A program made the translations under genes and the position numbers. DNA of 64,000 nucleotides. Source: Asterias rubens (lineage: Eukaryota). This document shows, one piece after another, positions 21,701-63,300 of this stretch. Positions within the stretch are counted from its first letter, which is position 1; every line of letters begins with the position of its first letter. The notes under the pieces are model-generated. The model was given only the letters and a program-made list of their open reading frames with translations. It was not told the DNA's origin and made no database searches. The stretch lies in assembly GCF_902459465.1 (NCBI RefSeq), contig NC_047066.1, positions 16,244,001 through 16,308,000 of the forward strand, read 5' to 3'.

Positions 21701-24700
21701 TGTGCAGATGATTGCATTGAAACCTGCCGCTGTCCAGAAGGTCTGCTTCTTGAAGGAGATCACTGCATCCAACCTTCTGAATGTGGCTGCTTCTTAGAGG
21801 ATGGATCATACCTGGAAGTTAGTTTGAGATTCATTTCCATTTTTAGACAAGGATGACGGTTGAATTGCCTTTTATTTTTAAGTTAATTAAACGTTCAAAT
21901 TAGTTTTTTGAGTGGAGTGGAGAACTTACAATTTGTGGCTAAAATTTGATCCGGATTTTGTCATTAATATCTATAACTCTAGATTTTCTTGTTGCATCAC
22001 TCTTAAGAAGAGTGCAGAAGAGTGTTTATTTTACTGTTATGATGGTTTGGTTCTTTTCACTATTAGAATGATGGAGTTTGGGTGTCTCATGACTGCTCTT
22101 TGAAATGTGTTTGTGGTGAAGCTGGAGATGTGATATGTACAAGTATGGAATGTCACGAGTCTGCACAATGTGCCATCAAGAACGGTGTTAGGGACTGTTA
22201 CTGTAAGAGAGGTTTTACTGGAGATGGACTCAACTGCCAAGCAGGTAATAAATGAACATGTTACAAAATAAACTAAATCCTGTAACTAATTTGTCACAGT
22301 TTGTTTCTATTCAGTCTTAATATGAAAAATGCTCCACACTGATTTAATATGTCTTCCTGTCTGAATACAGCTCCTGGTGTATGTACTGCATGGGGAGATC
22401 CACATTATGTCACTTTTGACGGTCTGAAGTATGACTTCCAAGGAGATTGTGATTACACTCTTGTCAGAGATTGCACAAACACTTCAGCTCTTGCATCCTT
22501 CCATGTGATGGCTAAGAATGTCAAAAACAAGCCTTCTGAACGTGTATCCTACACTCAAGAAGTTAGATTGGAGTTTGGAGGCACTTTGTATTCTCTACTA
22601 AGGGATGGAGAGGTTCGAATCAACGGTGTGACTGTAACATTACCCTCCATGCGTCTTGATGGAGTCCATATCTACAATTCTGGTCGCAATGTGGTAAGAC
22701 TTGTTGTTCAAATTTGGTAGAAGAAGAGAGGTTTTTATTCCTTGATTTAGACAATTTTGAATCATTATCCAAATGGAAGATGTTCAGTGCATACAGTGTA
22801 CAGTACATGAAATGTTGGGTTCTTTGTTCTGGTCCCAATTATTTTCATATCTTTAACAATTATACAGATTTTGTTTTTTTGATGCCTTCTGGTTTCAATC
22901 TTACCTGTTGATTTAATTGAGAACAAGTTTATAACAGTTTTTCATAATTTTGTGTTTTTCAGGTTTTACAGACTGACTTCGAGCTAGAGATTGTGTGGAA
23001 TGGTCAGCAAAATGTCATGGTGACAATTCCTGTAGCATACTGGAATAGAACCTGTGGTCTTTGTGGAACATTTGACGGAGACAAACATAATGACTTTGCT
23101 CTACAAGACGGATCGCTGGTAAGACAATTATATAATAGTAATAATAATTATAAGACAAAGTTCTTATAAAGCGCACATATCCTAGACACTAGGTCAAGGC
23201 GCTGAACAAATAGAGAATTAACAATCATTAAATTAATGGGCTCTGAATAGTTCAGAACAGTTCAGAAAAAATAATTTTTAATAGTTGACACTTATTTTTT
23301 TAGCCAGTATAATACTACTGAACATAAGCTTTTTTAATAATGTCTTTATTAACCTTTTTTACTTTTAGAGAGAGAGCGCTACTGACTTTGGAAACAGCTG
23401 GGTGTTGGATGAAGACCAATGTGATCCTACAATAGAGATGCCAGATCCGTGTGATGAGGGCACAGAACCATTCCGACAGGCTACTGATCTGTGCTATGTA
23501 CTCATCGATCAAAACGGTTTGTCAATTTATTTGTGGAAACTTATCATAACTGTGTAAATGTTTTGTAAAATTTGTGATATATTCCCAATTTTTCTTTTCA
23601 TATGTTGCAGGTCCTTTTGCATCATGCCATGATTTTGTTGATCCTGTTGCGTATCACGAGTCTTGTGTTTTTGATCTTTGTGCTACACTTCCTGAAGATG
23701 ACGTGATCTGTTCCAGTCTTGAGACTTATGCAGATGTTTGTCATCTTGCTGGACAGAGGGTTGGTAACTGGAGAAGAGAGAGGCATCAATGTGGTAAGTG
23801 AGGTTTTGTTCATGTTCCTTTTCTTTACCTTTTTCGTTAAGAAGTACCCGATTAAAAACAATTCTGTGATTCGGGATTCCGGCAAGAAAAAAATTGCCGG
23901 AAAATTTGGGGGGATTTTGCAGGATCCTGTTTGACAGGAGTCACGGCAGGATTTTGATAGGATTCTATCCTGGTTAATCCAACTTGAATCCTGTTTATAA
24001 CCAGTGACCCAATCAACCTGGTTAATCAAACTTGAATCCTGTTTATAACCAGTGACCCAATCAACCTGGTTAATCAAACTTGAATCCTGTTTATAACCAG
24101 TGACCCAATCAACCTGGTTAATCCAACTGGGATTCTGGTTATTCTAAAAGGAATCCTGGTTGATCCAACCGGAATCCTGGTTAAAACCAGTTGCCCAACC
24201 AATTGGGATTTGTTAAATGCATCCTTTTTCAGTTGAATTTTTCAGTTGTGTATTATCAGGTATGTACTGTAACTTTGCACTGGTATCTACAAAACAAGGT
24301 GCTCAAGGCGCTGAGTATATACAAACTTTCAGAAAGATACATGTAGGTTATTGCAGTGATGAATTCTGAGACCCAATTATTTAGCACCTTATAAGGGTTT
24401 ACAAGGTGCTACGGCGCATACAGCAGCCACAGCCAGGAACACCGGGGCGAACCCCTTCTCTTTTCTATAAGTGCACTGGGTTCTTTTACATGCGTTACAC
24501 AAGGGACCAACGGTTTTACGTCCCATCCGAAGGACGAAGCAATGGTTAAGTGTCTTGCTTAAGGACACAAGTGTCACGGCTGGGGATTCAAACCCACACT
24601 CTGCTGATCAGAACCCCAGAGTTTGAATTCGGTGCTCTTATCGCTCGGCTTTTCGATTGCTTTCAATAATTAACTTTCTTATAAATTTCTAGGTGTAAAA

Positions 24701-33700: not shown

Positions 33701-36700
33701 TTTGTTATAACTCAATAAAACTATTTGAAGGCTGACAAAAAAAACAACCTGCGGTCGATTTCACCAAGAAAGTAAGATTCATGTGAAGACTAGATGTTAG
33801 TATCACATAATGATTTGTATTGAGACATCACTATTCCCTTAGCAATTAAAATTGCTTTGCACGTCAGATCAATCTTAACTCTTTTTGAAATCGAACTCTG
33901 GTCACCTATTGAGAATTGACAATTAGGATCAATGTTAATATTCTTTTGGAACCAGAGAAAAGATGACCATAATTGCGTAATGAAGATCTGTTGCTTTGGA
34001 AACTGTATTCAAGTATATTTCAATTCCCTGAACTGGTTTGTGCACAGGCTTAACGCGCCGTGCATTTTGCCAATGTTTTTAACATTAGTTTTAGTTTGTT
34101 GATATTTGTATTTATTAATCAGATTTCTATAAACTAAAATTAAAAGAACGATAATTTTAAAATATCTATTTCTTTATAATTTGTTCTTCTAATTTGATCA
34201 GGTTATCAAGTTGACTCAACATGGCGATGTAAGCATTGATGAAGTAGATGTCAAACTACCATTTGTGTCAGTGGAGGGCTTCAATATTTGGTACACTGGA
34301 AAAGAAACGGTAAGTTTTAAAGTTTTGCGAACTGTACTTTCTTCATTTGGTGCATTGGTATTCTGACAATAGATTTTGTAGAGTTTCATGGTAGAGTGAT
34401 CTAGTGCAACAGACTCCAGGTTCTTACCGTCAGAGTTTTTTGGGGGGTCCTGGCTTTGACACTTCTGTCCTTGAGACAAATACTTGACAATATTTCTTTA
34501 ACAGTTGTAATTTTGCATTGGAGGTTAATAGTATAATTTGGTTTTTAATAAGGATGTGTATTATAATATTAAAGGCAGTGGACACTATTGGTAATTACTC
34601 AAAATAATTATCATCATAAAACCTCACTTGGTAACGAGTAATGGGGAGAGGTTGGTAGTAAAAAACATTGTGAAAAACGGCTCCCTCTGAAGTGACATAG
34701 TTTTCGAGAAAGAAGTAATTTTCGCCAAATTTGATTTCGAGACCTCAAGTTTAGAATTTGGGGTCTCGAAATTAACCATCTAAACGCACACAACTTTGTG
34801 TGACAAGGGTGTTTTTTTTCTTTCATTATTATCTCGCAACTTCGACGACCGATTGAGCTCAAATTTTCACAGGTTTGTTAATTTATGCATATGTTGAGAT
34901 TTACCAAGTGAGAAGACTAGTCTTTGACAATTACCAAGAGTGTCCACTGTCTTTAAGCACTTTGTACTCAATACTTTCCTGAGTTAGTCCACAGGCAATT
35001 CCCTTAGGTTGGATTTGAACACAACCTTTGTGTTGCTAAAGCAGATGTTTTACCACTACATGTAGATCATCCAGCTAGCTTGTTGGCTAGGAGGCAGTTA
35101 CATAGGTGCTAGCAGTGGTACATCAATGATTCAATAGATGTATTATAAGTTATCAAACAAGCGCGAGTGGAATTACGGAAAAATATAGCGCTTCTGCGTC
35201 CCAAATGATATGGGACGCAGACGCGCTATATTTTCCGTATTTCCACGAGCGAGCCTGTGATAACGTATTTATCTTCAAGCAAACTTGGCGCGTGACATAG
35301 AACACACAAGACGCATGGTAGTGATATTAGCCGTGCAATATAGGTTTTTATCACCACTCCATTCTGCCAATCTGATTGGAGGATTAGCGCCTACTTGAAG
35401 ATAATGTTCTTTGTTTTGTTATTATATGAGTGGGGTCTCTACTCGACAAACTGATGCTTCTTGGAAACCTCTATCCTCACACAAAATCCAATTGTACTTA
35501 AATGTACATGTTTGTTTTCCTTGATCATTATATAATGTAAACAATATCACTTTTCTTTGTGTGTGGTAAAAATAAAAGAAATGAATGAAAATGAATCAAT
35601 GTTAATTTTTGCAACAAGGATAAAGAATATAATTAGTTTGCAGCCTTTCATTGATGTGTAAAAAGGACTACTTTCCCAAGTTATTTTAATAAAAGAAAAT
35701 CCACAGGCTAATCACTTGGGTGGGATTCGAACCTTCAACCAAATATGTATTGATACTCAGTGGAGAAGCAAGGAGAAGGTTGACCAGGGTGTTTTGAAGT
35801 GGCCCACATCTTTTCTTCCCCTCATTTCAGTCAGTTGGGAATTATTTTTAATGTTTTTTTTTTCTTTGTAGATGTTATCAACCAGATTTGGTTTATCCAT
35901 TCGTTGGGACGGAAGGTATACTGTAGCCATAACAGTGCCTCCAGCATACGACAGTGCACTGTGCGGTCTGTGTGGAAACTACGATACAATTAAAGGAAAT
36001 GACTTCATGTTGTCAGATGGGTCTGTGGTAAGTGAACTATTGAGCCACATTGAAAGCAGTTTTCACTAACATGTTCCACCGTTCTTTAGAACCAAATGGT
36101 TGACTGTACATCAGGATGGACTGTGTTATGAAAAACCAGGGTAAAAAAAAAATTTTGAGGGATGTTTTTGTGATTCATTATGTACTTTTAGAAACTTTTA
36201 GAAAATCTGTTCAACAATATTTATCTCATGAGAAGCGCTTTTGTTTACCAAAGCACCCAATACTAAGGCAATGTGTCTTTTTAAGAAAATAATTTACTCC
36301 ATAAAGACTATTCATCACCAAACACCAAACATGACAACTTATCCCTTGTTTGTCATATTTCGCTTTCTTATTGTTCTTTCGGAGATAGTGAGTTACTTTT
36401 TTTGTGATTGTCTTTTTTTGCTGTAGTGTTCCTTTTACATACAGTGCAGTTGGTTGCCTCCAAGTTACCTGAACAATTTCCTTCTGGGACAAGGCCTTTG
36501 TAGAAAATAAGCCTTTTTTGTGTATTTCAGACACCGGATGACGCAACACTGTTTGCTAACAGCTGGGTTGTGGACAACGAAAGATGTCATTCTGAGCCTG
36601 GTGTCACGGATCCATGTCAGGTGTATGCAAACCTGACTGTAGGACAAGATTTATGCTTTATTGTCAAACAGCCGAATGGTAAGCACATAAGAAAAACAAT

Positions 36701-39700
36701 AATGTCTGCAGTTTTAATTTTGTAATAGAATTGTTTCAAATTCTAATGTGAACATCAAAAACAATAGTTTCGTTTTGGGGATTCATTATTATAACAGCTC
36801 AGTTTTGTGTCAATTATGAAAAAGTAAAGAATTATTTTGGAAACAAATTCTGAAGTACTCTACCTCACAATTTGAAAAGAAATTTTTGTTTTGTATATTT
36901 ATTTGTAAAACTTCCAATTGCCGACGTTGTGGTTGAGTGGTTTAAGAGCACTGGATTCAAGCTTTGGTGTTTCTATTATTAAGCAGAGTGTGGGTTCAAG
37001 TCCCGATCGTGACACTCGTCTCTTTGGTGTTTCTATTATTAAGCAGAGTGTGGGTTCAAGTCCTAGTCGTGACACTCGTCTCTTTGGTGTTTCTATTATT
37101 AAGCAGAGTGTGGGTTCAAGTCCCGGTCGTGACACTCGTCTCTTTGGTGTTTCTATTATTAAGCAGAGTGTGGGTTCAAGTCCCGGTCGTGACACTCGTC
37201 TCTTTGGTGTTTCTATTATTAAGCAGAGTGTGGGTTCAAGTCCTAGTCGTGACACTCGTCTCTTTGGTGTTTCTATTATTAAGCAGAGTGTGGGTTCAAG
37301 TCCCGATCGTGACACTCGTCTCTTTGGTGTTTCTATTATTAAGCAGAGTGTGGGTTCAAGTCCCGATCGTGACACTCGTCTCTTTGGTGTTTCTATTATT
37401 AAGCAGAGTGTGGGTTCAAGTCCTGGTCGTGACACTCGTCTCTTTGGTGTTTCTATTATTAAGCAGAGTGTGGGTTCAAGTCCTGGTTGTGACACTCGTC
37501 TCTTTGGTGTTTCTATTATTAAGCAGAGTGTGGGTTCAAGTCCTGGTCGTGACACTCGTCTCTTTGGTGTTTCTATTATTAAGCAGAGTATGGGTTCAAG
37601 TCCTGGTTGTGACACTCGTCTCTTTGGTGTTTCTATTATTAAGCAGAGTGTGGTTCAAGTCCTGGTCGTGACACTCGTCTCTTTGGTGTTTCTATTATTA
37701 AGCAGAGTATGGGTTCAAGTCCTGGTTGTGACACTCGTCTCTTTGGTGTTTCTATTATTAAGCAGAGTGTGGGTTCAAGTCCCGGTCATGACACTCGTCT
37801 CTTTGGTGTTTCTATTATTAAGCAGAGTGTGGGTTCAAGTCCCGGTCGTGACACTCGTCTCTTTGGTGTTTCTATTATTAAGCAGAGTGTGGGTTCAAGT
37901 CCTGGTCGTGACACTCGTCTCTTTGGTGTTTCTATTATTACGCAGAGTGTGGGTTCAAGTCCCGGTCGTGACACTCGTCTCTTTGGTGTTTCTATTATTA
38001 AGCAGAGTGTGGGTTCAAGTCCTGGTCGTGACACTCGTCTCTTTGGTGTTTCTATTATTAAGCAGAGTGTGGGTTCAAGTCCTGGTTGTGACACTCGTCT
38101 CTTTGGTGTTTCTATTATTACGCAGAGTGTGGGTTCAAGTCCCGGTCGTGACACTCGTCTCTTTGGTGTTTCTATTATTAAGCAGAGTGTGGGTTCAAGT
38201 CCTGGTCGTGACACTCGTCTCTTTGGTGTTTCTATTATTAAGCAGAGTGTGGGTTCAAGTCCTGGTCGTGACACTCGTCTCTTTGGTGTTTCTATTATTA
38301 AGCAGAGTGTGGGTTCAAGTCCCGGTCGTGACACTCGTCTCTTTGGTGTTTCTATTATTAAGCAGAGTGTGGGTTCAAGTCCCGGTCGTGACACTCGTCT
38401 CTTTGGTGTTTCTATTATTAAGCAGAGTGTGGGTTCAAGTCCTGGTCGTGACACTCGTCTCTTTGGTGTTTCTATTATTAAGCAGAGTGTGGGTTCAAGT
38501 CCTGGTCGTGACACTCGTCTCTTTGGTGTTTCTATTATTAAACAGAGTGTGGGTTCAAGTCCTAGTCGTGACACTCGTCTCTTTGGTGTTTCTATTATTA
38601 AGCAGAGTGTGGGTTCAAGTCCCGGTCGTGACACTCGTCTCTTTGGTGTTTCTATTATTAAGCAGAGTGTGGGTTCAAGTCCCGGTCATGACACTCGTCT
38701 CTTTGGTGTTTCTATTATTAAGCAGAGTGTGGTTCAAGTCCTGGTCGTGACACTCGTCTCTTTGGTGTTTCTATTATTAAGCAGAGTGTGGGTTCAAGTC
38801 CTAGTCGTGACACTCGTCTCTTTGGTGTTTCTATTATTAAGCAGAGTGTGGGTTCAAGTCCCGATCGTGACACTCGTCTCTTTGGTGTTTCTATTATTAA
38901 GCAGAGTGTGGGTTCAAGTCCTGGTCGTGACACTCGTCTCTTTGGTGTTTCTATTATTAAGCAGAGTGTGGGTTCAAGTCCTGGTCGTGACACTCGTCTC
39001 TTTGGTGTTTCTATTATTAAGCAGAGTGTGGGTTCAAGTCCTGGTCGTGACACTCGTCTCTTTGGTGTTTCTATTATTAAGCAGAGTGTGGGTTCAAGTC
39101 CTGGTCGTGACACTCGTCTCTTTGGTGTTTCTATTATTAAGCAGAGTGTGGGTTCAAGTCCTGGTCGTGACATTCGTCTCTTTGGTGTTTCTATTATTAA
39201 GCAGAGTGTGGGTTCAAGTCCTGGTCGTGACATTCGTCTCTTTGGTGTTTCTATTATTAAGCAGAGTGTGGGTTCAAGTCCTGGTCGTGACATTCGTCTC
39301 TTTGGTGTTTCTATTATTAAGCAGAGTGTGGTTCAAGTCCTGGTCGTGACACTCGTCTCTTTGGTGTTTCTATTATTAAGCAGAGTGTGGTTCAAGTCCC
39401 GGTCGTGACACTCGTCTCTTTGGTGTTTCTATTATTAAACAGAGTGTGGGTTCAAGTCCTAGTCGTGACACTCATCTCTTTGGTGTTTCTATTATTAAAC
39501 AGAGTGTGGTTCAAGTCCTGGTCGTGACACTCATCTCTTTGGTGTTTCTATTATTAAACAGAGTGTGGTTCAAGTCCTAGTCGTGACACTCGTCTCTTTG
39601 GTGTTTCTATTATTAAGCAGAGTGTGGGTTCAAGTCCCGGTCGTGACACTCGTCTCTTTGGTGTTTCTATTATTAAGCAGAGTGTGGGTTCAAGTCCCGG

Positions 39701-42700
39701 TCGTGACACTCGTCTCTTTGGTGTTTCTATTATTAAGCAGAGTGTGGGTTCAAGTCCCGGTCGTGACACTCGTCTCTTTGGTGTTTCTATTATTAAGCAG
39801 AGTGTGGGTTCAAGTCCCGGTCGTGACACTCGTCTCTTTGGTGTTTCTATTATTAAGCAGAGTGTGGGTTCAAGTCCTAGTCGTGACACTCGTCTCTTTG
39901 GTGTTTCTATTATTAAGCAGAGTGTGGGTTCAAGTCCTGGTCGTGACATTCGTCTCTTTGGTGTTTCTATTATTAAGCAGAGTGTGGGTTCAAGTCCTGG
40001 TCGTGACATTCGTCTCTTTGGTGTTTCTATTATTAAGCAGAGTGTGGGTTCAAGTCCTGGTCGTGACATTCGTCTCTTTGGTGTTTCTATTATTAAGCAG
40101 AGTGTGGGTCAAGTCCTGGTCGTGACACTCGTCTCTTTGGTGTTTCTATTATTGAGCAGAGTGTGGTTCAAGTCCCGGTCGTGACACTCGTCTCTTTGGT
40201 GTTTCTATTATTAAACAGAGTGTGGGTTCAAGTCCTAGTCGTGACACTCATCTCTTTGGTGTTTCTATTATTAAACAGAGTGTGGTTCAAGTCCTGGTCG
40301 TGACACTCATCTCTTTGGTGTTTCTATTATTAAACAGAGTGTGGTTCAAGTCCTAGTCGTGACACTCGTCTCTTTGGTGTTTCTATTATTAAGCAGAGTG
40401 TGGGTTCAAGTCCCGGTCGTGACACTCGTCTCTTTGGTGTTTCTATTATTAAGCAGAGTGTGGGTTCAAGTCCCGGTCGTGACACTCGTCTCTTTGGTGT
40501 TTCTATTATTAAGCAGAGTGTGGGTTCAAGTCCCGGTCGTGACACTCGTCTCTTTGGTGTTTCTATTATTAAGCAGAGTGTGGGTTCAAGTCCCGGTCGT
40601 GACACTCGTCTCTTTGGTGTTTCTATTATTAAGCAGAGTGTGGGTTCAAGTCCTGGTCGTGACACTCGTCTCTTTGGTGTTTCTATTATTAAACAGAGTG
40701 TGGGTTCAAGTCCTGGTTGTGACACTCGTCTCTTTGGTGTTTCTATTATTAAACAGAGTGTGGTTTAAGTCCTGGTCGTGACATTCGTCTCTTTGGTGTT
40801 TCTATTATTAAGCAGAGTGTGGTTTAAGTCCTGGTCGTGACATTCGTCTCTTTGGTGTTTCTATTATTAAGCAGAGTGTGGGTTCAAGTCCTGGTCGTGA
40901 CACTCGTCTCTTTGGTGTTTCTATTATTAAGCAGAGTGTGGGTTCAAGTTCCGGTCGTGACACTCGTCTCTTTGGTGTTTCTATTATTAAGCAGAGTGTA
41001 GGTTCAAGTCCTGGTTGTGACACTCGTCTCTTTGGTGTTTCTATTATTAAGCAGAGTGTGGGTTCAAGTCCTGGTCGTGACACTCGTCTCTTTGGTGTTT
41101 TGTATTAAGCAGAGTGTGGGTTAAAGTCCTGGTCGTGACACTCGTCTCTTTGGTGTTTCTATTATTAAGCAGAGTGTGGGTTCAAGTCCCGGTCATGACA
41201 CTCGTCTCTTTGGTGTTTCTATTATTAAGCAGAGTGTGGGTTCAAGTCCTGGTCGTGACACTCGTCTCTTTGGTGTTTCTATTATTAAGCAGAGTGTGGG
41301 TTCAAGTCCTGGTCGTGACACTCGTCTCTTTGGTGTTTCTATTATTAAGCAGAGTGTGGGTTCAAGTCCTGGTCGTGATACTCGTCTCTTTGGTGTTTCT
41401 ATTATTAAGCAGAGTGTGGGTTCAAGTCCCGGTCGTGACACTCGTCTCTTTGGTATTTCTATTATTAAGCAGAGTGTGGGTTCAAGTCCCGGTCGTGACA
41501 CTCGTCTCTTTGGTGTTTCTATTATTAAGCAGAGTGTGGGTTCAAGTCCCGGTCGTGACACTCGTCTCTTTGGTGTTTCTATTATTAAGCAGAGTGTGGG
41601 TTCAAGTCCTGGTCGTGACACTCGTCTCTTTGGTGTTTCTATTATTAAGCAGAGTGTGGGTTCAAGTCCTGGTCGTGACACTCGTCTCTTTGGTGTTTCT
41701 ATTATTAAGCAGAGTGTGGGTTCAAGTCCTGGTCGTGACACTCGTCTCTTTGGTATTTCTATTATTAAGCAGAGTGTGGGTTCAAGTCCTGGTCGTGATA
41801 CTCGTCTCTTTGGTGTTTCTATTATTAAGCAGAGTGTGGGTTCAAGTCCCGGTCGTGACACTCGTCTCTTTGGTATTTCTATTATTAAGCAGAGTGTGGG
41901 TTCAAGTCCCGGTCGTGACACTCGTCTCTTTGGTGTTTCTATTATTAAGCAGAGTGTGGGTTCAAGTCCCGGTCGTGACACTCGTCTCTTTGGTATTTCT
42001 ATTATTAAGCAGAGTGTGGGTTCAAGTCCCGGTCATGACACTCGTCTCTTTGGTGTTTCTATTATTAAGCAGAGTGTGGGTTCAAGTCCTGGTCGTGACA
42101 CTCGTCTCTTTGGTGTTTCTATTATTAAGCAGAGTGTGGGTTCAAGTCCCGGTCGTGACACTCGTCTCTTTGGTGTTTCTATTATTAAGCAGAGTGTGGG
42201 TTCAAGTCCCGGTCATGACACTCGTCTCTTTGGTGTTTCTATTATTAAGCAGAGTGTGGGTTCAAGTCCTGGTCGTGATACTCGTCTCTTTGGTGTTTCT
42301 ATTATTAAGCAGAGTGTGGGTTCAAGTCCCGGTCGTGACACTCGTCTCTTTGGTGTTTCTATTATTAAGCAGAGTGTGGGTTCAAGTCCCGGTCATGACA
42401 CTCGTCTCTTTGGTGTTTCTATTATTAAGCAGAGTGTGGGTTCAAGTCCTGGTCGTGATACTCGTCTCTTTGGTGTTTCTATTATTAAGCAGAGTGTGGG
42501 TTCAAGTCCCGGTCGTGACACTAGTCTCTTTGGTGTTTCTATTATTAAGCAGAGTGTGGGTTCAAGTCCCGGTCGTGACACTCGTCTCTTTGGTGTTTCT
42601 ATTATTAAGCAGAGTGTGGGTTCAAGTCCCGGTCGTGACACTCGTCTCTTTGGTGTTTCTATTATTAAGTAGAGTGTGGGTTCAAGTCCCGGTCGTGACA

Positions 42701-45700
42701 CTCGTCTCTTTGGTGTTTCTATTATTAAGCAGAGTGTGGGTTCAAGTCCCGGTCGTGACACTCGTCTCTTTGGTGTTTCTATTATTAAGCAGAGTGTGGG
42801 TTCAAGTCCCGGTCGTGACACTCGTCTCTTTGGTGTTTCTATTATTAAGCAGAGTGTGGGTTCAAGTCCCGGTCATGACACTCGTCTCTTTGGTGTTTCT
42901 ATTATTAAGCAGAGTGTGGTTCAAGTCCCGGTCGTGACACTCGTCTCTTTGGTGTTTCTATTATTAAGCAGAGTGTGGTTCAAGTCCCGGTCGTGACACT
43001 CGTCTCTTTGGTGTTTCTATTATTAAGCAGAGTGTGGGTTCAAGTCCTGGTCGTGACACTCGTCTCTTTGGTGTTTCTATTATTAAGCAGAGTGTGGTTC
43101 AAGTCCCGGTTGTGACACTCGTCTCTTTGGTGTTTCTATTATTAAGCAGAGTGTGGTTCAAGTCCCGGTCGTGACACTCGTCTCTTTGGTGTTTCTATTA
43201 TTAAGCAGAGTGTGGGTTCAAGTCCTGGTCGTGATACTCGTCTCTTTGGTGTTTCTATTATTAAGCAGAGTGTGGTTCAAGTCCCGGTCGTGACACTCGT
43301 CTCTTTGAATCAGAAACTTTACCATAATTGCTTTGTCCTTCAGATGGGAAATAAGGCCATAGGTCCCCTGTACTAGGACACTTAAAAGGACACATAATAT
43401 TTATCATGCAAGACTAGGGGTTAACGTTGGTGTTTCTTGTTCACATACCAAACACTCTTGGTTTCATTACCAGAAAAAAACAAATACTAACAATTGTTTC
43501 TGCCTTCTTGTTGTATTCTTAGGTCCCTTTGCAGAGTGCAATATTCATCTAGACCCCAATATATATTATGATGCATGTGTCTACGATGCATGTGCCACAC
43601 TGCCAGACCTTGATGTTATCTGCGATGACATCAGCATTTATGCTGAAACCTGCACTAAATATGGCTTCCCACCCTCACCTTGGAGGAAAGAAGATTTCTG
43701 CCGTAAGTTCCAACTTCTTAACTTTGTTTTTTGTTCCTCTTCTTTGGTTGTTTGAAGTATTTGACAGCCTTTAGCACCATTTCCAGAGTACCACCATAAT
43801 TGATTCTGAATTTTTACTGATTGAGAATCAATTATGTGATGCGATACAAAAGACTCATGAAAATGGCTCGGGGAAACATGGGTGATGAACCCCACAGGAA
43901 AAATTAGAGTGATCAGGCCCATCGATGGTCATTTCAAGCACCTTGTACAGTGTTAGAAATAGCCCTGGGGTGGATTTCACAAAGAGTTAGGACTAGTCTT
44001 ATCTCGACTTAGGACCAGTTTATACTTGTCCTAACTTAGGACTATCCATGCAATGTGTATATCTCCTAGGACTAGTCCTAAGTTAGGACTAGTCCTAACT
44101 CTTTGTGAAATCGAACCCTGGGTATTAGGTTGTTCGAGGTAATCATGCTGGTAGTAGTAGGTAAGTTAATATGTGTTTTCTTGTGGGGGAGCAGTGGAGA
44201 AATATTTTTGGCCAACGACCTGTTCAGTGCAACATTTGTATAAAGGGTTGGGTTATTTGTTAACATCACAATTATACAACTGAATTAAATTTTCAATAAA
44301 CACAATTAAGCAGAGAGTTTTTACACACAAAAGCCAAGTCTCTTTCTTCATGTACACCCACAATGTCCTCTACAAAAACAATTGTAATTGTTTTGCATTA
44401 TGATTTGTTTTGAGTGGTATGTATTGATGTCTACAAGGGAGAAGTGGTGGGTCTGAAAAGAGCTGGCTAATGGTTCTCCAGGTCAATTGTGTGGAAAAGT
44501 TAATAGAGAAAGAATTATGAATCTGACAAATGTAATATCAGGTCCTTTACCTGCATATATGGCTAAACATTATTAATTTTTTTAGATTTGTTCATATTGG
44601 ATTTTCAATAGTTTTTTTCCCAGTGATATACCAGGTAACCGGAACAATCACTCCTTATGTGATAACAAATCTGTGTGTGTCTCGGGTAGTTATGAACATT
44701 GATCCTTTTATTCCTTTGACTCCAATCCTTCTAATTTGTTGCCACTTTCAGCACTCCGATGTTCCGGTGGTCAAATCTACTCACCGTGCTCTCCGGTGTG
44801 CCCAGAAACATGCGCCAGTCGTGACGAAGAGGGCTCGGCAAGATGTGATTCCTGCCAGGAAGGCTGTGTGTGCCCACCTGGATTCAAACTCGATGATCGG
44901 GAGTGTGTTCCTTCCAGTCAGTGCGGCTGCACGGATCAAGGCTATTATTACTCGGTATGTACTATTCCAGGCTTAGGGTCATTATTAAGCCTCTATTCAG
45001 TCTGCCGATAGTGATTAACCCAGGCTAGCTAGTCAAACAATGAGATCAATAATCTCTTACTCCATGGCAGTGAAGATTAGGAGAAGTTCCCTCGATCATC
45101 AAGGTGGCAGTAGAAATCCCTTGAATTTGTCATGCCTACCTTGCTAGAGCTACATGTACTGTAGCTATAGAAGTTCCCTCGAGCATCAAGGTGGCAGTAG
45201 AAATCCCTTGAATTTGTCATGCCTACCCTGCTAGAGCTACTGTAGCTATAGAAGTTCCCTCGATCATCAAGGTGGCAGTAGAAATCCCTTGAATTTGTCA
45301 TGCCTACCTTGCTAGAGCTACTGTAGCTATAGAAGTTCCCTCGAGCATCAAGGTGGCAGTAGAAATCCCTTGAATTTGTCATGCCTACCCTGCTAGAGCT
45401 ACTGTAGCTATAGAAGTTCCCTCGATCATCAAGGTGGCAGTAGAAATCCCTTGAATTTGTCATGCCTACCTTGCTAGAGCTACTGTAGCTATAGAAGTTC
45501 CCTCGAGCATCAAGGTGGCAGTAGAAATCCCTTGAATTTGTCATGCCTACCCTGCTAGAGCTACTGTAGCTATAGAAGTTCCCTCGAGCATCAAGGTGGC
45601 AGTAGAAATCCCTTGAATTTGTCATGCCTACCCTGCTAGAGCTACTGTAGCTATTATGCATTAGGACAAGTTTTTGGTATCGCAACCTAATTAGTCTCCC

Positions 45701-48700: not shown

Positions 48701-51700
48701 TACAGGGTCACACTTATTGTAAACAAAGTTCACATGGTCTATACTTTAACTTATTTACGAATAATATTGAACGACCGACCTCGTGCAGAATTGTCAACAT
48801 CCTACATATCTGAAGAAAGAATTATTCTCATCAGGTTAAGTGTTCAAATCGTACAGTAACAATCTTGAAGAGTTTTTTTCACAAAGCTAGACTTTAAGCC
48901 TGTTTTATATAGTGCTTGTGAAAGTTGTCTGTTATTAATATCAGGTACTTTTAGTTTTAATCTTGGGAGCTTATAAATGTATATATATGATAATATTGAG
49001 ATTGGTAATTAGATTTTGCGTCCGTAGCTGTTGCGATGATTGAAGGTTTCTGAACTTTGATGATAGGCCACCTACAAAAAAACAAAACACACGATGGATA
49101 TCTTGTAAACGGTGCGGACATCAATTTATCACCCCCCAATCTCTTTGCCTTATTAGATAAAATGCACTTGGTTTTCCCTTTAATCTTGATGGATAAAATG
49201 GATTTCTTACATTCCTTGAAACGTGTTGCATTTATAAAACTATATAGGTAAGCTTTTGTTATATGTATTTTGAGAGACTGAAATAACAAAAACAAAACAT
49301 TTTTCTGTTTAGCATGGTTAGAGGAGTACACCACTAGTAGTATTTTGGTCTCCAGGAACAATAAAATGAAGTACGTGACGAGTTTATTTCAGGCGGAAAC
49401 TCTTAGCCAATCATGATCCATGTTGTAGCGGGCCAATCACGATCCACGATGTATAATAATGACTTAAGGCACCGCTACCAAGTGTGCTCAGATTTTTAAA
49501 TGTCACTGAAGTACACCTGGTGGCGATGTCACATGTCACGTGATAGAGGGCTGTTCTTCTTTGTGATTTCCGCGTCCATTGCATTCTCTTCCTGTCCTAT
49601 AAGTGAACCATGATATCAAAATCCTTCTGGAATATTGCGTTTCAACCGTTCGTCACTTCCGTTCTGCACAGCTCGCGTATTTGAAGTACCTGCCATGCCT
49701 GTGGAATGAGATCCCCGAGTTCGTTAAGGAGTCACGGTTGATCTATTCAAGAATCACCTATGAAAGCTCATGATGTTCACTGTGCATCATTAATATTGTA
49801 AATTGTGTTTATATATTTTATTCTTGAAGCTTGCTGTTTTGCTTTGCGCAGCAAAGGTATTCCAGCAATTTCTGCACACTTCATTCATTTTCACTATCAC
49901 ACACTCGAACTCAAGCATTTCCCTCAATAGTTCACTCAAACTAGGGTTTCCTTTTTGCTGTTTATGCATTAAGTTTTGTGCACACTACTTCGTTTTTCCC
50001 ATTCAGACTCGTTTCAGTCCTTTGATTTAATTTATAGGCATTCAAGACTACACATTGACCATTCATAAGTTCAAGTTGAATTTATATTACCTATTCACAC
50101 TTGATGAAAACGATAGGTTGACCAGCTCTTGTTGTTGGCTTTTACGAAATTGAATGAGTCTTGCGGCCTAATGAAATTGAATGATCTAATTATCTGCCCA
50201 GTGAACGATAAACTGGTGGAATTGAATCACTATTCTGATTCAGTGGAGCATTCATTGTCAACTGAAGTTGAATGAGCTGGGTGTTGAAAAGAATGTTGTT
50301 CAAATTGGCGGTAGATTTATTTCCAGTTGATTCGTTGAAATGTCTGAGACAATTGTTTCGGACATCAGTGAACCGTATTATTACCTACCAGACTTGTTTG
50401 ATGAAATTGGTTACAAACCAATTTTAAGTAAGATGTACATCTGAAATAAGAAAAAAAATGGTGGGTTTGTGTACATAACTAAAACAGTTGTAACTATTTA
50501 GACTTTCAACCCAAACACAAACCTATACCCGTTTGAAGAAAAAAAAAAAAGGTGGGCATGTCACTTTGGTAAAAGTCGCTTACGTGAAAATAAGTGGAAC
50601 TTATTTTTATTAACACAAAAGCTTATAGTTATTATAAACATTGAATTACAGTGAAATTGCACATTTATCACAAAGTTTTTCAAAGTACAATAGGGCATAC
50701 CTTTTCGGTAAGACCTTTCTAATGTTGTTCAACAAACCGCGCTGGTTGGCATGGGGCCAAAATGTTAGCAAAACATTCAATGTGTTTATAGATGTGTGTT
50801 CTAATTCAAAATGTCTGCAAATTTCCAACTCAAACAAATTTCATTCCATAATTGGGTGCATTTGGTTCCAACAAGTTCAACCCATTTTACAAACTTTGGC
50901 TATCAGTTGTTGCTGTTCATTGATGCCTTCCGATACTTTTCCAACCTTGGCTGACAGCGATTTGGCTGTGATGTTGCCAAAAAAAGGAACGCACATTTGT
51001 CCTGCTTTATCTTTCTAAAATGGGAGGGCGCTTGTTTTTCAACGCCAGCAAACTCACAAGGAATGACGCAGTATGTTTTCTCCACAGTCGCATGATTATC
51101 ATTAACGTTTATTGTGAAGATTAAACACATGATTATAATAGTTTTTCAAAAGAGGGAAGGAAATAACCCCACAAAGGGTCCGTTTTTGTTCTTTTCTTAT
51201 AATTTGTTTTCATACTAACTTTCCCAGGGTTGCTAACATACCGATAGCGTGAATGCCACCCAGCGATCCATTGTGGAAACGCACTCAGGCTTATTACCGT
51301 TGCTACACCAGGCCGGGTACCTGGCATTGTATATTTCTGGGTCCCTACATCACTAAGCCCAAATCTACAGATATTTAATAATTGTATGGGTCACGCAAAC
51401 CGCGCACACAATGGAGGGGAAATTTCATGGGAACCGCTGGATGGGAAGCTCTTTTTCTCCCGTCCAGGTTTAGCAAGATAACAAGGAAAGATTTGACTAA
51501 CCCTGCGAGCCAGAGTACATTGGTCAAAGAATATATTTGGCCACTGTGTATGAACAGCTTTTGGTCTTTTTTGTACCTATCCATTGCGGCTTGTAATAAT
51601 AGTTATTTAGCCGCAGGTACCCACTCATGTATTGCAATGTTATAAAAGGTTGGGTGCTAACAATAACACACCTTGGCCTTTCAATCTGCTTCAACCTTTT

Positions 51701-57352: not shown

Positions 57353-60300
57353 AAGGAACGCATTGTCAAGGAGTAAGCCTATAGTGCCCACGCTTAAAGG
57401 CAGTGGACATTATTGGTAATTACTCAAAATAATTATGAGCATAAAACCTCACTTGGTAACGAGTATAGGCAGAGGTTGGTAGTATTACACATTGCGAAAA
57501 AACGGCTCCCACTGAAGTGACAAAGTTTTCGAGAAAAGTAATTTTCCACGAACTTGATTTCGAGACTCCAGATTTAGAATTTGTGGTCTCGAAATCAAGC
57601 ATCTGAAAGCACACAACTTCGTGTGACAAGGATGTTTTTTCTTTCATTATTATCTTGCAACTTTGACGTCTAATTGAGTTCAAAATTTCACAGGTTTGTT
57701 TTATGCATATGTTGAGCTACACAAAATGAGAAGACTGGTCTTTGACAAAACCAATAGTGTCCAGTGTCTTTAAAACCCTTGTTTCAGCTCAGCAGAAATA
57801 AGCAGGATACCACAAGGTAATTTGATCCCAGTAAGCATACATTTCTGGGCTACTTTATGGGTTAAAGCAGGACAATGAAATCGGGCTTGGAATTACGCGA
57901 AGGCAACTGAGGCCTGTTACCTACGTCATGGCTGGTCTTGATACACCTCCATAACGATAATTGAAGAAACAAAAACTGCATGCATTTATATAGCGCCTAA
58001 CACCTCCAAAAGAAAACCTCTATAAAGCGCTCAGAGGAAACACAGAATAATTATATGACGAATTGAACAGAAATGTTTTGAAGAGACTCTTGAAACTTGG
58101 ATAGAGGTAGCTCGTTTGATGTTGATTGTTCCATAAATGAGATGCAGCAAACTGAAAACCACGTTTGACCACATTGTTTTTGACAATTATTTTCGTGCCA
58201 ATATTTGCAGTGCCCTTGGCAGTTTATAAATGGGCTTGCCCTCTAAAATATGAAATTTCGACATGTGAAATTGGTGCTTGTATTTTTCACCCCCCCCCCC
58301 CCCCCCCCCAACCCAATCAAAAATGCAAGGAAACCATGGTTTGAATGCGGGAAAAACTAGTATGGTTCTTGTTTTTTCTTTGAAATTCACCCATCGTGAT
58401 TGTATAATGCACATTCAAAAATCTTGACAAATATGGCGGCAGGGATAACAGGTTCCGGGGTGACTTTCATAGGTCACGTTTTAACCTACATAGTTTGGTA
58501 GTTTTCTTTTGAAATCATCAAGGTAAAGAGAGAGAAAAAAAATTAATTGTACCGGATACTAGACGTACCTGTAAATACATATCGATCAAAATGGAAAGTA
58601 TAATCGTTAACGTGGCAGGCGCTTGTGTGAAACACAATGGACATGCGCTGTGAGCTAAAGGTATTCAAAAGAACAGATCGCAGCGTGTGGAAACTAGGTA
58701 AACCTTGGAGCGCCATTTTGGGGCACTTATATATAGAGGAAACGATTGGTTTTGCACAAAATGAAAAGAACGAATATAGGACGGGAAAATTATTTCTGAA
58801 ACCATTCTTTGGTACTAACTGGTGATCCGGTTTTAATTCTTCAAATGTAAAACAATTGGATGAAACTTGTGGGCATGTTGTAATATTAGTTAGTATTAAT
58901 CGGATCTAATAAGCTCATATTTGGTGTCATTGGTGTGAGGATGGTTTGGGTTCGGTTGTGTTGATTCAGTGATCTGACAGGGGCGTACGTTTAATATATA
59001 TATTTTGAGAGATCGTCTAACATTACAATAACGGACGGCCACTTCAGTGTGAATGTGAAGGATACACCTCACCGATTTGGACTATCGACTTGGCAAATCA
59101 CCTGCCAATAAAGACACGTTGCCACATACATGTAATGGCTAGGGTTGAAACAGGGTTACCTCCCTCACAGTCCGTTGGACGTAGGCATAGGTATGCATCC
59201 ACCAAAGGAGCCTATAGCCGACAAAACAGAATGCACTATTTCAATTTTTTTTTTATGAACCCATTATGGTGAAGTGCCCTGCTCATGCGCTCAAGTTAGT
59301 GTCATGGCCGGGAATCAAACCAACACTCTTCTGCTGACAACACCAAGTCTTGGGTCCGGCGAACTTCACGGCTTTGCCACGACACGAAATTATAGTCGTG
59401 AAAGTAGCATTTTACGGAAATTGCACTCAAACTGTTTGTTAGAAACGCTTCAAGGAGTCCAGGACACAATTTCACAGAGCTGCTTTTTAATGCAGACAAT
59501 AATTTTTGGCTAAGCAAACGATGTTCGGCTTAGCAAAACATTGTATACGAATTCAGTATTATAATGTTGGCTAAGCAGCTCACGGAAACATGGCCCTGCC
59601 GGTAACCACTTATTTGGAGGTCCCCTTTTAGAAGTTTAAACGACGAATACGGTTTATATATTATGTTCGCAAATTAATTTAATTTTGTGAATGAAATGGA
59701 CACTTCATTCATTTTGTCACATCCTCAATTTTCTGCGTTCTTAAAATGTTATCAAAAAGTCCATCTCATGTGGTAGATTAAATTGAATCTCACGCAATGT
59801 GTTTATTTGTTGTGCTTTGCAGTTGAGTCAACAACATTCCAAACAACAATGCTGACAACTGATGACAGTACAACAATAGTAACATATCAGAGCACGACAT
59901 GGGACTTCACAACAGAGGGCGCCACCACCACCGACGGTGCGATCACAACTGATCGTACCACGTTGGGTGCGTTGTCAACTACTGCAGCATCCACAACTGA
60001 TGAGTCGACGTCGATGCAACAATCAACAACTTTAGAACCTTTGTCGACCACTGACGAGTCAACAACTACAGCCTTCACAACAGATCGTACCACGTTGGGT
60101 GCGTTATCAACTACTGCAGCATCCACAACTGATGAGTCGACGTCGATGCAACAATCAACTTCAGAACCTCTGTCGACCACTGACGAGTCAACAACTACAG
60201 CCTCCACAATTGATGACGCGACGTCAACTCAACAATCAACTACTTCCGAGCTGTTGATGACCACTGACGAGTCAACAACAAAAGAAGAAGCAACGACGTT

Positions 60301-63300
60301 GAAAGTGTCCACAACAACTCGTCCACCATCAACAACAACTCTTCCATCATTAACAACTCGTCAACCATCAACAACAACTCTTCCACCATCAACAACTACA
60401 CAGCCAGCAGTGACCACCGATCAACCAACTACAACTATGACACCAATTACGTCATCACCGTCAACTACACAACCGACCATCCTTTATAATCTTACCCTCA
60501 CAAATAAGAACAGCACCTCACTCACCATCTCATGGACGATCTTCGTAGAGGTGGCGGCCCTTCAGGTCCAGTGGCGCCCTCTCTCGGCTGGTTCAAACTT
60601 CGAGAGCAGCGGTGCTGTTTTTGCAACTCTGCCCGAGTACAAGTTGACTGGTCTGATGGCAGCCACTACGTATGAGATACGCCTTGCTTTGCCGAGGAAT
60701 GGAGTGCTAGAGACTGGGGACTCTGTGTTTGATACTACATGTCCCGAAGGATTCACAAATCTCCTTTGTTCAGAGGGTAAAACAATGTTTACTAGAGACG
60801 AAATAAATTCTTTAAAGGCAGTGGACACTATTGGTAATTGTCAAAGACCAGCCTTCACAGTTGGTGTATCTCAACATAAGCATAAAATAACAAACCTGTG
60901 AAAATTTGAGCTCAATCGGTCATCGAACTTGCGAGATAATAATGAAAGAAAAAAACACCGTTGTCACACAAAGTTGTGTGCGTTTAGATGGTTGATTTCG
61001 AGACCTCAAGTTCTAAATCTGAGGAATCGAAATCAAATTCGTGGAATATTACGTCTTTCTCTAAAACTATGGCACTTCAGAGGGAGCCAATTCTCACAAT
61101 GTTTTATACCATCAACCTCTCCCCATTACTTGTCACCAAGTAAGGTTTTATGCCAATAATTATTTTGATTAATTACCAATAGTGTCCACTGCCTTTAAGG
61201 GGACGTATATACCTTTGATTTTTGTAACCGTTCGATGGTTTTAATCCTTTATGTAAATATAGATTATACAATAAAACTTATTTTTGAAAAAGGTGAAAGC
61301 GGTATTGAGATATCGCCGAAAATCCGGAGCGGTTTATTTTTAGTCCTCGGAGGAAGATAATTGGTTATTGGAATACACAATCTGAGAAACATTCAAATTC
61401 AAATGTTGGTAACATAAAAACTGGTATCTTTTCCCATAACAACGTACTTCAAAGTGTTCAGATTCTCAGAATGCTGTGTACTATCGAAAGCTGCTGTACT
61501 AAGTACCAAACAAAAACCTCCCAATTTTATTAACAAATATCCAATTGTACAGAGGGTGAGTTTCATCGTAACCGTCAAAACTGGAAATACATTTTTTTTG
61601 CAAAGAGAAAATACGCAAAGAACGGTTCATGGTCAAAAAGGTTAATTTATTAATGGCAATGTGACATCGGGGCTCTCTTAAAAGTAACGCCTAAAAACAT
61701 GATGTGGCAATCTGTCATCTAGTCAATATAATAGGGAGTTTTCGCTTTGGACGACGGATATGGTTCTGCGACGGTGAACCATCCGTCGTCCAAAACTCCA
61801 TATTCTCTTGGTAACAGAGACTCGGTTTGAATAACCGAACCCCGTATGATTATTTACGAATACAATTTTTTTGATGTATGTATTTAATCTAATTTGCCTT
61901 TAGATATAACCATCTACGGACTTACCCTCGACACTGCAACCAGTAGCTCCCTGTCTGTATCTTGGCATCTCACCGGCCCAGTGGACTGGATCGAGCTAGA
62001 GTACCAAGTAGTAGAGTTTGATACCTCATGGCGGCAATCGTCCGTTCTCACGGGCACCACTACCTCAGACACCCTGTTCGGTCTAGAGCCAGAGCAACAG
62101 GTGCTGATCAGGATACACGCAAGGGGTCTAGACGGCACTGATGCGTACACGGAGCAGAAAACATTTGAGACTTGTATCAGATTCTATCAGGGAGCTTCAT
62201 GCGAGGAATGTAAGAATACCAACTGGGGTTCTTTAAGTTTAGTTTTGTTTGTTCATTGCGTACATAAGCCATTTTTGTTTAAAGTATTGAAGGTAGGTAT
62301 TACATAAAGGTTTAATAATAGTAAGAGTTGTCCATGTCGAGATTGATACATATGGGTATCTAGATGAGTTAAGATGGCTTAGAGAAGTCTTTTCTTAGAT
62401 GGAGATGCCCTTTCTTTGAGCTTCCGTCTCTTTTACGGCAAAGTTTTTGTTTCATTGTGAGCAGTTCTAAGACGTTTCGAAGTTTGTGATTTCAATATGA
62501 GGATACTCCCGTCGCTGTATTATTATTTTTATTTTTGAACAATTCAGATATTATTTGTTAAAACTTTGTTTGTGTTTAGCTCTACCGTATGATGGAAGTA
62601 TATTCGGCAGGAGTAGTTCTGCAGTAGCATTCGGGTTGGATTCGAACCTGAACGCTGATACAGTGACCGGACAGTACCTGAGTGGCTCCACGTTTCTACG
62701 GCAATCCTGGGTCTTTGGAGATACCATTGATGCTGCACGCACGTCGTACATCTTCAATGGGCTGAACCCCAACACCGATTACAACGTGCGTTTCGTGTAC
62801 GTTGGAAGCGCGGGAAATGTGACTATTTCACAGACGTACGGTGTGAACACGTGTGCCGTAGGTTTCCAGGGCGTTAACTGCGAGGGAGGTAAAGCTATAA
62901 TGACAACATTTCTTCTTTTCAACATTATCTTCTGCCCGAAATGTGCAATAATTTTTGACATCGTTTTCAAAAGAATTGGTGATGAGTTAACATTAAATAC
63001 CCCGTTTGTTTTATAATATTAATTAACGCAAGTTTCATTGTTTCATATAACAAAAATTAAAAACATTTTCGATCATTATTTCAAATAAAATTTATTGTAA
63101 ACAGTATTAAGTAATGGTTAAATAAATACAATCGCGGAAGTCGCTAAATTCGTCTGAAAATGCTCAAGACGCTTCACAAAGTTAGAGTTAAAAGTAAATT
63201 GTATTCAAAATTACATGAGCAAACATGGTCGCGGCATGATAATTTACCTGCCGTCGATTTCACCATACTTTTCCAAGCTCGGGATTAATCCTAGGACTTT

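What the first reader, a model, noticed from the sequence alone, without database searches (positions are those of the whole stretch)
36920..43470. A 6.3-kb satellite born inside one SINE: 106 tandem RNA polymerase III B-boxes in an intron
Seen: the SINE head with its A-box (36930-40) precedes the array and the SINE body resumes right after it (43308). The 60-mer is the SINE segment between two CTTTG microhomologies and each monomer carries GGTTCAAGTCC, with rare point variants. A 13-monomer, 776-bp higher-order duplication is visible (cattcg monomers at 39171 and 39947). An unamplified relative sits at 24376-24649. Known: the B-box (GTTCRANNC) is the main TFIIIC-binding site, and B-box-only sites and tDNA clusters act as chromatin boundaries. 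Inference: only the first B-box has a normal A-box partner, so the rest could form a dense TFIIIC platform or a source of repetitive RNA. It is also a complete snapshot of satellite birth from a SINE.
Basis: partly seen in the sequence, partly recalled or inferred. Interest (0 to 1): 0.7.

Follow-up and report, generated by a model that had tools for sequence, protein, structure and literature searches.

The report
SINE-derived 60-bp minisatellite in an intron
One old copy of a tRNA-type SINE inside an intron of an echinoderm mucin-like gene has had a 60-bp internal piece, which carries the polymerase III B-box, copied head-to-tail 106 times; this is real and arose locally, but it is one of many such SINE-derived arrays in this genome, the kind is already known from reptiles, and nothing yet shows that it has a function.

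Summary
A 60-bp x 106 array (36962-43307, 97% matches) lies colinearly inside one tRNA-type SINE copy. The head with its A-box is at 36920-36961 and the body resumes at 43308. The array is bounded by CTTTG on both sides and fills 96% of a 6.8-kb intron of a + strand VWD-C8-TIL gene.

101 of 106 monomers keep GGTTCAAGTCC. The 13-monomer, 776-bp duplication is real, and its two copies differ at 3 sites. The monomer-to-monomer junction occurs nowhere else in the 418-Mb genome, so the array arose locally.

It is not a singular event. The same SINE family has produced other arrays with different unit boundaries:
- head-derived arrays of 48, 54, 70, 73, 76 and 78 bp
- a 91-bp family at many loci on one chromosome
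- tail-derived 61-, 86- and 98-bp arrays without any B-box, the 86-bp form at many loci on many chromosomes

Amplification is therefore not specific to the B-box. SINE-derived satellites whose unit includes box B are already described in squamates (Vassetzky 2023).

The most likely reading is a neutral, single-locus minisatellite made by slippage or unequal exchange. This is a new member of a known kind, in a new phylum.

The parts
36915..36919 (+). possible 5' target-site duplication (CAATT); weak
   Evidence: The same 5 bases recur at 43491-43495, just after the SINE tail. Five bases is too short to be conclusive.
36920..36961 (+). SINE head (tRNA-related 5' part), with the A-box TGGTTGAGTGG at 36930-36940
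   Evidence: It aligns with the heads of other family copies. The A-box matches the consensus at 10/11 positions. Rfam gives only a weak hit to a long-variable-arm tRNA model, 12 bits.
36962..43307 (+). tandem array of 106 units of 60 bp, each unit being the SINE segment from the anticodon/variable-arm region through the T-arm (B-box) to just past it; the first B-box is at 36993-37003
   Evidence: TRF; monomer table; 101/106 B-boxes intact; the junction 22-mer is unique to this locus.
39120..39895 (+). first copy of the 13-monomer (776-bp) higher-order duplication
   Evidence: It is 99.6% identical to 39896-40671, with 3 differences. Monomer-type strings are DDDIEMNOAAAAG and DDDRSMNOAAAAB.
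39896..40671 (+). second copy of the 13-monomer duplication
41098..41101 (+). the only run of four or more T on the sense strand of the whole SINE plus array, in one mutated monomer
43303..43307 (+). terminal CTTTG, the 5-bp direct repeat shared by the unit start and the SINE body junction
43308..43490 (+). SINE body and tail, carrying a ~70-bp internal deletion relative to other family copies, between short CYCTTG repeats
   Evidence: Family alignment; tail hits at 71-77% identity elsewhere in the genome.
36680..43522 (+). host intron (6,843 bp), 96% of it occupied by the SINE plus array; same orientation as the gene
   Evidence: Donor and acceptor read; flanking exons are VWD (35872-36066) and C8 (43525-43701) by Pfam.
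24376..24649 (-). unamplified relative of the SINE, from a different subfamily in its 3' part
   Evidence: Sequence read; 73% identity over 24499-24640, colinear and with a single unit.

Best explanation
This is a single-locus minisatellite that arose inside one old, inactive copy of a tRNA-type SINE.

Inferred origin: two CTTTG pentamers 60 bp apart in that copy allowed a first duplication by replication slippage or unequal exchange.

Expansion: the array then grew to 106 units by repeated unequal exchange or slippage at one-monomer and multi-monomer registers. The 2-, 3- and 13-monomer duplications are shown.

Decay: the array has been diverging mainly by C-to-T changes.

The B-box is carried along because it lies in the amplified segment, not because it was selected. 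The array sits in an intron, is read through by polymerase II as part of the pre-mRNA, and is most likely neutral apart from lengthening the intron from about 0.5 to 6.8 kb.
For: Shown:
- The array is colinear with the SINE head and body.
- The unit is bounded by CTTTG on both sides.
- The junction 22-mer occurs 106+2 times in the genome at up to 3 mismatches, against 1+6 for the control. The 100 matches listed are all at this locus; 8 were not listed.
- The nearest non-locus matches to the head plus unit are single-copy at 81-87% identity.
- Nested duplications exist, including a 776-bp pair with only 3 differences, against a 3.5% mean monomer divergence.
- Our SINE copy also carries a deletion between short direct repeats in its tail.

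The process is generic in this genome. Independent arrays with other unit boundaries lie inside other copies of the family: 48, 54, 70, 73, 76, 78 and 91 bp from the head and 61, 86 and 98 bp from the B-box-free tail.

A published precedent has a nearly identical unit: snake sSat3 is 67 nt, Squam3 positions 42-108 including box B (PMC10702118).
Against: Neutrality is inferred, not shown.

B-box-anchored tandem pairs are far more frequent per motif than tandem pairs of the SINE core. The B-box 16-mer gives 170 pairs at about 24 loci from 1,896 motifs. The core 16-mer gives 9 pairs at 4 loci from 2,534 motifs. Some position preference within the SINE therefore exists.

The monomers do not fold better than shuffled sequence, so hairpin-assisted slippage is not supported.

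No read data were available to confirm the assembled copy number.
Confidence: 0.78

Rival explanations
1. The array is a dense TFIIIC-binding platform (an ETC-like, B-box-only site) that acts as a chromatin boundary or organiser.
For: 101 of 106 units keep a sequence that fits the B-box consensus GGTTCRANNCC. [quoted passage not shown] Head/B-box segments appear in tandem more often than the SINE core.
Against: There are no occupancy data.

Tail segments of the same SINE that lack any B-box are amplified at least as often: 190 tandem pairs at many loci. No B-box-based selection is therefore needed to explain the array.

The array's B-box has A where the family consensus has G, at the position (G57 in yeast, G70 in human) that makes a base-specific contact.

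The array is a single locus buried in an intron.

16 of about 20 substitution types are C>T or G>A, five of them at the three CpGs. This suggests germline cytosine methylation or deamination rather than a protected, factor-bound state.
Confidence: 0.1
2. The SINE head still works as a polymerase III promoter, and the array is transcribed into a long repetitive RNA or processed into small RNAs.
For: The head has a 10/11 A-box 63 bp (start to start) upstream of the first B-box. The sense strand has no run of four T until 41098, so a Pol III transcript would meet no canonical terminator for about 4.2 kb.
Against: The copy is old: it is 71-77% identical to other copies in the tail and 81-87% in the head. 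ARAGORN finds no tRNA, and Rfam gives only a 12-bit tRNA-like hit.
Confidence: 0.05
3. The copy number or internal order of the array is partly an assembly artefact.
For: Long, near-identical tandem arrays are hard to assemble. No reads could be laid on it.
Against: The array has 30 monomer variants in a structured, non-periodic order, clean junctions to unique flanks on both sides, and no N in the window. This is what a long-read assembly of a real array looks like. Even if the count is off, the finding stands.
Confidence: 0.05

Closest known systems
SINE-derived satellites (sSat) of squamate reptiles, especially snake sSat3 (Vassetzky, Kosushkin & Ryskov 2023, Mob DNA 14:21; PMC10702118)
   Same: The tandem unit is an internal piece of a tRNA-related SINE. 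The snake unit (67 nt, positions 42-108) covers the 3' part of the head including box B plus the start of the body, which is almost the same segment as here (about positions 41-100, 60 nt). In both, the arrays are flanked by the remaining SINE sequence, different units arise independently from the same SINE family, and di- and trimeric higher-order patterns are seen.
   Different: This is an echinoderm, and the authors did not know whether sSats exist outside squamates. This 60-mer sits at a single intronic locus rather than at many subtelomeric loci. Both SINE termini are retained.
Classical minisatellites / VNTRs
   Same: A 60-bp unit, a single locus, a kb-scale array, internal variant repeats, and multi-unit duplications that indicate unequal exchange or slippage.
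   Different: The progenitor sequence and the founding 5-bp direct repeats are still visible. Length polymorphism was not tested.
ETC (extra-TFIIIC) sites and B-box clusters that act as chromatin barriers in yeasts, worms and mammals
   Same: Consensus-fitting B-boxes with a canonical A-box only before the first unit (background).
   Different: Known ETC sites are defined by TFIIIC occupancy, which is unknown here. None is described as a 106-unit array.
Tandem tRNA-like 'pol III' repeats of amphibians (PolIII/TAN, OAX, Rana/polIII, Hy/polIII)
   Same: Tandem repeats that contain tRNA-related sequence (listed in PMC10702118).
   Different: Those have 200-360-bp or longer units and no demonstrated SINE parent. 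Here the parent SINE copy is intact around the array.

Membership tests
SINE-derived satellite (sSat, sensu Vassetzky et al. 2023) | The repeat unit is homologous to a defined part of a SINE. | tested here: met
   The unit aligns to the head-to-body segment of more than 20 family copies.
SINE-derived satellite (sSat, sensu Vassetzky et al. 2023) | The terminal unit(s) extend into the rest of the SINE up to its terminus. | tested here: met
   Head at 36920-36961 on the 5' side; body and tail at 43308-43490 on the 3' side.
SINE-derived satellite (sSat, sensu Vassetzky et al. 2023) | At least four tandem units. | tested here: met
   106 units.
SINE-derived satellite (sSat, sensu Vassetzky et al. 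2023) | Satellite-like spread: many loci, a shared unit, subtelomeric or heterochromatic location. | tested here: not met
   The junction 22-mer is found only at this locus. Other units of the family (91-bp head, 86-bp tail) do occur at many loci.
tRNA-derived SINE | Internal polymerase III promoter: an A-box and a B-box in the 5' head. | tested here: met
   TGGTTGAGTGG at 36930-40 and GGTTCAAGTCC at 36993-37003. The family consensus B-box is GGTTCGAGTCC.
tRNA-derived SINE | The head is recognisably tRNA-like in sequence and structure. | tested here: inconclusive
   ARAGORN finds none. Rfam hits only the tRNA-Sec model at 12-15 bits, against a gathering score of 47. The fold is no better than shuffles.
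tRNA-derived SINE | A dispersed family with many copies. | tested here: met
   822-1,321 first-look candidates. The B-box 16-mer gives 1,896 exact hits and the core 16-mer 2,534, on all chromosomes.
tRNA-derived SINE | Target-site duplication flanking the copy. | tested here: inconclusive
   Only CAATT (5 bp) is shared, at 36915-19 and 43491-95.
ETC / TFIIIC-only site | A B-box motif that fits the consensus. | tested here: met
   101/106 units. Position 57 is A rather than the G of the family consensus.
ETC / TFIIIC-only site | TFIIIC occupancy without TFIIIB or Pol III. | not testable with these tools
   No chromatin data were reachable.
ETC / TFIIIC-only site | Barrier or insulator activity. 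| not testable with these tools
   No Hi-C or reporter data were reachable.
Minisatellite / VNTR | A 10-100-bp unit in a single-locus, kb-scale array with variant repeats. | tested here: met
Minisatellite / VNTR | Length polymorphism between individuals. | not testable with these tools

The most novel reading that the evidence does not exclude
The B-box segment of this SINE family is a preferred seed for tandem amplification because TFIIIC binds it. A bound B-box could stall replication forks and provoke template switching. The resulting arrays, with this 106-unit one as the extreme, would then be occupied by TFIIIC and act on chromatin. The convergence with snake sSat3, whose unit also spans box B, would then reflect a shared mechanism rather than chance.
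Probability: 0.08. Interest if true: 0.7.

Novelty: new member of a known kind. Interest (0 to 1): 0.4.

Why it matters
This is an unusually clean example of how a tandem array starts. The parent SINE copy, the 5-bp founding repeats and the later multi-monomer duplications are all still readable at one locus.

Together with the other arrays found here, it shows that SINE-derived tandem repeats are not confined to squamates, where they were described in 2023. They also occur, repeatedly and from several SINE segments, in an echinoderm.

The locus would be a convenient test bed for two questions: whether B-box arrays recruit TFIIIC, and whether minisatellite length varies between individuals. 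No evidence yet makes it more than neutral repeat turnover.

Tried and rejected
1. Hairpin-driven slippage. Two monomers folded as DNA and head plus unit folded as RNA are no more stable than shuffles (z = -0.5 and +0.2). Dropped.

2. B-box-specific amplification. Head/B-box tandems outnumber core tandems. However, tail-anchored tandems without a B-box are even more numerous. Rejected as a general rule.

3. A widespread satellite independent of this SINE. Rejected, because the junction is unique to the locus and the best other matches are single units at 87% identity or less.

4. The array was brought in by retrotransposition of an already expanded master copy. No second copy of the junction exists.

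5. A real tRNA gene. ARAGORN finds none and Rfam gives only sub-threshold hits.

6. Coding potential. The long ORFs through the array are a by-product of a 60-bp (3n) stop-free unit. The upstream exon's frame hits a stop soon after the donor.

7. An A-box-like 9/11 match (AAGCAGAGTGT) in every monomer. By my rough estimate this is within what chance would give, so it is not used.

The first genome search failed on a pure-repeat query.

9. Earlier notes of this scan. Nothing was on record near the locus or by key words.

10. Species. mir-2006 points to an echinoderm. A paper search for the assembly size gave nothing, so the species is left unnamed.
Full report
**What is there**

TRF reports one array at 36962-43307, with period 60, 106.1 copies, 97% matches and no indels. 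Splitting at the unit start gives 106 monomers: 88 of 60 bp, 17 of 59 bp and one of 58 bp. They comprise 30 distinct sequences with a mean pairwise difference of 2.1 per 60.

Immediately upstream (36920-36961) is the 5' head of a tRNA-type SINE. Its A-box TGGTTGAGTGG lies at 36930-36940 and matches the consensus at 10 of 11 positions. Immediately downstream, from 43308, the SINE body continues to about 43490.

Every unit starts with CTTTG. One more CTTTG (43303-43307) closes the array before the body resumes. The unit is therefore exactly the stretch between two 5-bp direct repeats. Each unit contains GGTTCAAGTCC, and 101 of 106 copies are intact. The window has no N.

**Internal history**

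The monomer-type string shows nested duplications:
- an ACH-ACH three-monomer repeat
- alternating two-monomer patterns around 41388-42047

That is far less than the 3.5% average divergence between monomers. Growth therefore continued by multi-unit unequal exchange or slippage long after the first duplications.

Of about 20 substitution types, 16 are C>T or G>A, split equally between the strands. Five of them sit at the three CpGs of the unit. The first CpG is split 49 C to 57 T. This points to cytosine deamination, probably of methylated DNA. That last step is inference.

**The parent element**

A reconstruction of head plus one unit plus body was built in a script from window coordinates. 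It aligns colinearly, across both junctions, with many other genomic copies. Identity is 71-77% over the body and tail and 81-87% over the head.

The family is large:
- 822-1,321 first-look candidates
- 1,896 exact hits to a 16-mer around the B-box
- 2,534 exact hits to a 16-mer of the core

In the family the two founding sites read CTCTG and CCTTG. In this copy both read CTTTG. The copy also lacks about 70 bp of the tail, between short direct repeats.

The relative at 24376-24649 lies on the minus strand. It belongs to a subfamily with a different 3' part and carries the segment once.

tRNA ancestry is supported by the promoter boxes, but only weakly by models. ARAGORN finds nothing, and Rfam gives a 12-bit hit to the long-variable-arm tRNA-Sec model against a gathering score of 47.

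**Local origin**

The 22-mer that spans a unit-to-unit junction occurs 106 + 2 times in the 417.6-Mb assembly at up to 3 mismatches. A reversed control gives 1 + 6. The 100 matches listed are all at this locus; 8 were not listed.

**Genomic setting**

The window is C5:16244001-16308000 of a 150-contig assembly. A mir-2006 precursor at 49458-49540 on the minus strand (91 bits) points to an echinoderm. The species was not determined.

On the + strand lie exons of a gene built of repeated VWD, C8 and TIL modules. The array sits in the intron 36680-43522:
- the donor is G|GTAAGC
- the acceptor AG is at 43521-43522
- the intron lies between the end of a VWD module and a C8 exon
- the array has the same orientation as the gene

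The SINE and array make up 96% of that intron.

**The finding is not singular**

Searching the genome for two B-box 16-mers 30-90 bases apart gave 170 pairs at about 24 loci. The reversed control gave none. I fetched several of these loci and ran TRF on them.

| Source segment | Period (bp) | Copies | Locus |
|---|---|---|---|
| head | 48 | 14 | C19 |
| head | 54 | 8.9 | C17 |
| head | 70 | 16.2 | C12 |
| head | 73 | 6.1 | C2 |
| head | 76 | 5.5 | C13 |
| head | 78 | 13.7 | C16 |
| whole head (A- and B-box) | 91 | up to 35.6 | about 16 loci on C23, plus unplaced C75 |

In the loci I inspected, a SINE head precedes the array and a SINE body follows it. These are therefore separate events with different breakpoints.

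Tail segments of the same SINE also form arrays:
- 86 bp, at many loci on many chromosomes
- 98 bp
- 61 bp

A tail-anchored search gave 190 tandem pairs. That is more than the B-box-anchored search gave. Core-anchored pairs are rare: 9 pairs at 4 loci from 2,534 motifs. Some SINE segments are thus favoured as seeds, but the favoured ones include a segment without any polymerase III promoter element.

**Mechanism**

Most likely, the first duplication came from slippage or unequal exchange between the two CTTTG pentamers. Expansion followed by unequal exchange or slippage at varying registers, and mutation produced the variants. The first step is inferred from the boundaries. The later steps are shown by the nested duplications.

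I tested whether the unit forms unusually stable hairpins that might favour slippage. It does not (z = -0.5 as DNA and +0.2 as RNA).

**Function**

In favour:
- the B-boxes fit the consensus
- TFIIIC binds B-boxes with high affinity, and B-box-only ETC sites exist (PMC11811891 and PMC12409998)
- the sense strand has no run of four T before 41098, so a Pol III transcript from the head would not meet a canonical terminator for 4.2 kb

Against:
- B-box-free tail arrays are at least as common, so nothing about the B-box is needed to explain amplification
- the array's B-box carries A where the family has G, at a position that makes a base-specific contact in the human structure
- the decay pattern suggests methylated, unprotected DNA

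I put the neutral reading at about 0.78 and the TFIIIC platform at about 0.1.

**Comparison with what is known**

Vassetzky, Kosushkin and Ryskov (2023, PMC10702118) described SINE-derived satellites in 56 squamate genomes. The snake unit is 67 nt and covers Squam3 positions 42-108, that is, the 3' part of the head including box B plus the start of the body. That is practically the segment amplified here.

They also report the following:
- terminal units that extend into the SINE
- independent origins of different units
- di- and trimeric patterns
- the three-step model of a library of short duplications, then amplification, then homogenisation

They state that they do not know whether such satellites exist outside squamates. 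A 2024 bivalve study notes tandem SINE structures and calls for a targeted screen (PMC11481361).

The present locus is thus a new member of a known kind, in a new phylum. It is at the single-locus minisatellite stage rather than being a true satellite. The 91-bp and 86-bp families in the same genome are closer to proper sSats.

**Verdict**

Local origin from one SINE copy is confirmed. The function is unsupported and remains testable. Interest is moderate. The locus is a textbook-quality illustration and extends the taxonomic range. It is not a new kind of element, and the genome-wide context makes a special role for this array less likely.

Noticed in passing
G000 C23, about 16 loci between 3.70 and 10.08 Mb (e.g. 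L084:3470-6706, L071:2670-3479, L073:2419-3367, L074:1474-1910), and C75 (L072:7220-7803): A 91-bp satellite whose unit is the whole tRNA-like SINE head, with both the A-box and the B-box. It has up to 35.6 copies per locus. In the searches run here it was seen only on one chromosome and one unplaced contig. The largest array is flanked by a SINE head on the 5' side and a SINE body on the 3' side.
   Followed up: partly
Many loci, e.g. C14:13500937-13502412, C6:441585-442971, C6:495029-496238, C3:19613856-19642581, C4:153354-153883; L008:1-1554, L016:1672-2276: An 86-bp tandem repeat derived from the 3' tail of the same SINE family, with no B-box, at many loci on many chromosomes. Several loci lie within 0.5 Mb of a contig start, which recalls the subtelomeric bias reported for squamate sSats. 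A 98-bp variant lies at C12:15703804-15705974 (L021) and a 61-bp variant at C1:26533961-26534462.
   Followed up: partly
L079:1962-2443 (C17), L080:1869-2541 (C19), L081:2168-3282 (C12), L082:1843-2905 (C16), L086:1052-1483 (C2), L087:1015-1432 (C13), C15:532823-533771: Independent arrays containing the B-box, with periods of 54, 48, 70 (with 206/276-bp higher order), 78, 73, 76 and about 97 bp. Each has its own unit boundaries within the SINE.
   Followed up: partly
L083:3292-3501 (C2:206.8 kb): A 53-bp array of at least 4 units at the edge of the fetched stretch. By eye it resembles the reverse complement of the A-box part of the SINE head, without the B-box. This was not aligned.
   Followed up: no
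window 49458-49540 (-): A mir-2006 precursor (Rfam RF03979, 91 bits, just above the gathering score of 90). It lies antisense to the VWD-C8-TIL gene region and points to an echinoderm.
   Followed up: no
window 45082-45654: An 81-bp x 7 tandem repeat (96% matches), apparently in the intron after the TIL exon of the same gene. It is unrelated in sequence to the SINE array.
   Followed up: no
window 1084-1902 and 32-418: A 51-bp x 16 tandem repeat at 99% matches, and an 11-bp x 35 repeat at the window start.
   Followed up: no
window 59975-60397: Imperfect 81/129-bp and 21/39-bp repeats rich in ACN/TCN codons. They may be a Thr/Ser-rich (mucin-like) coding repeat of the same or a neighbouring gene.
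   Followed up: no
window 43430-43470: This SINE copy lacks about 70 bp of the family's tail, between two short CYCTTG direct repeats. This is a deletion counterpart of the process that made the array.
   Followed up: partly
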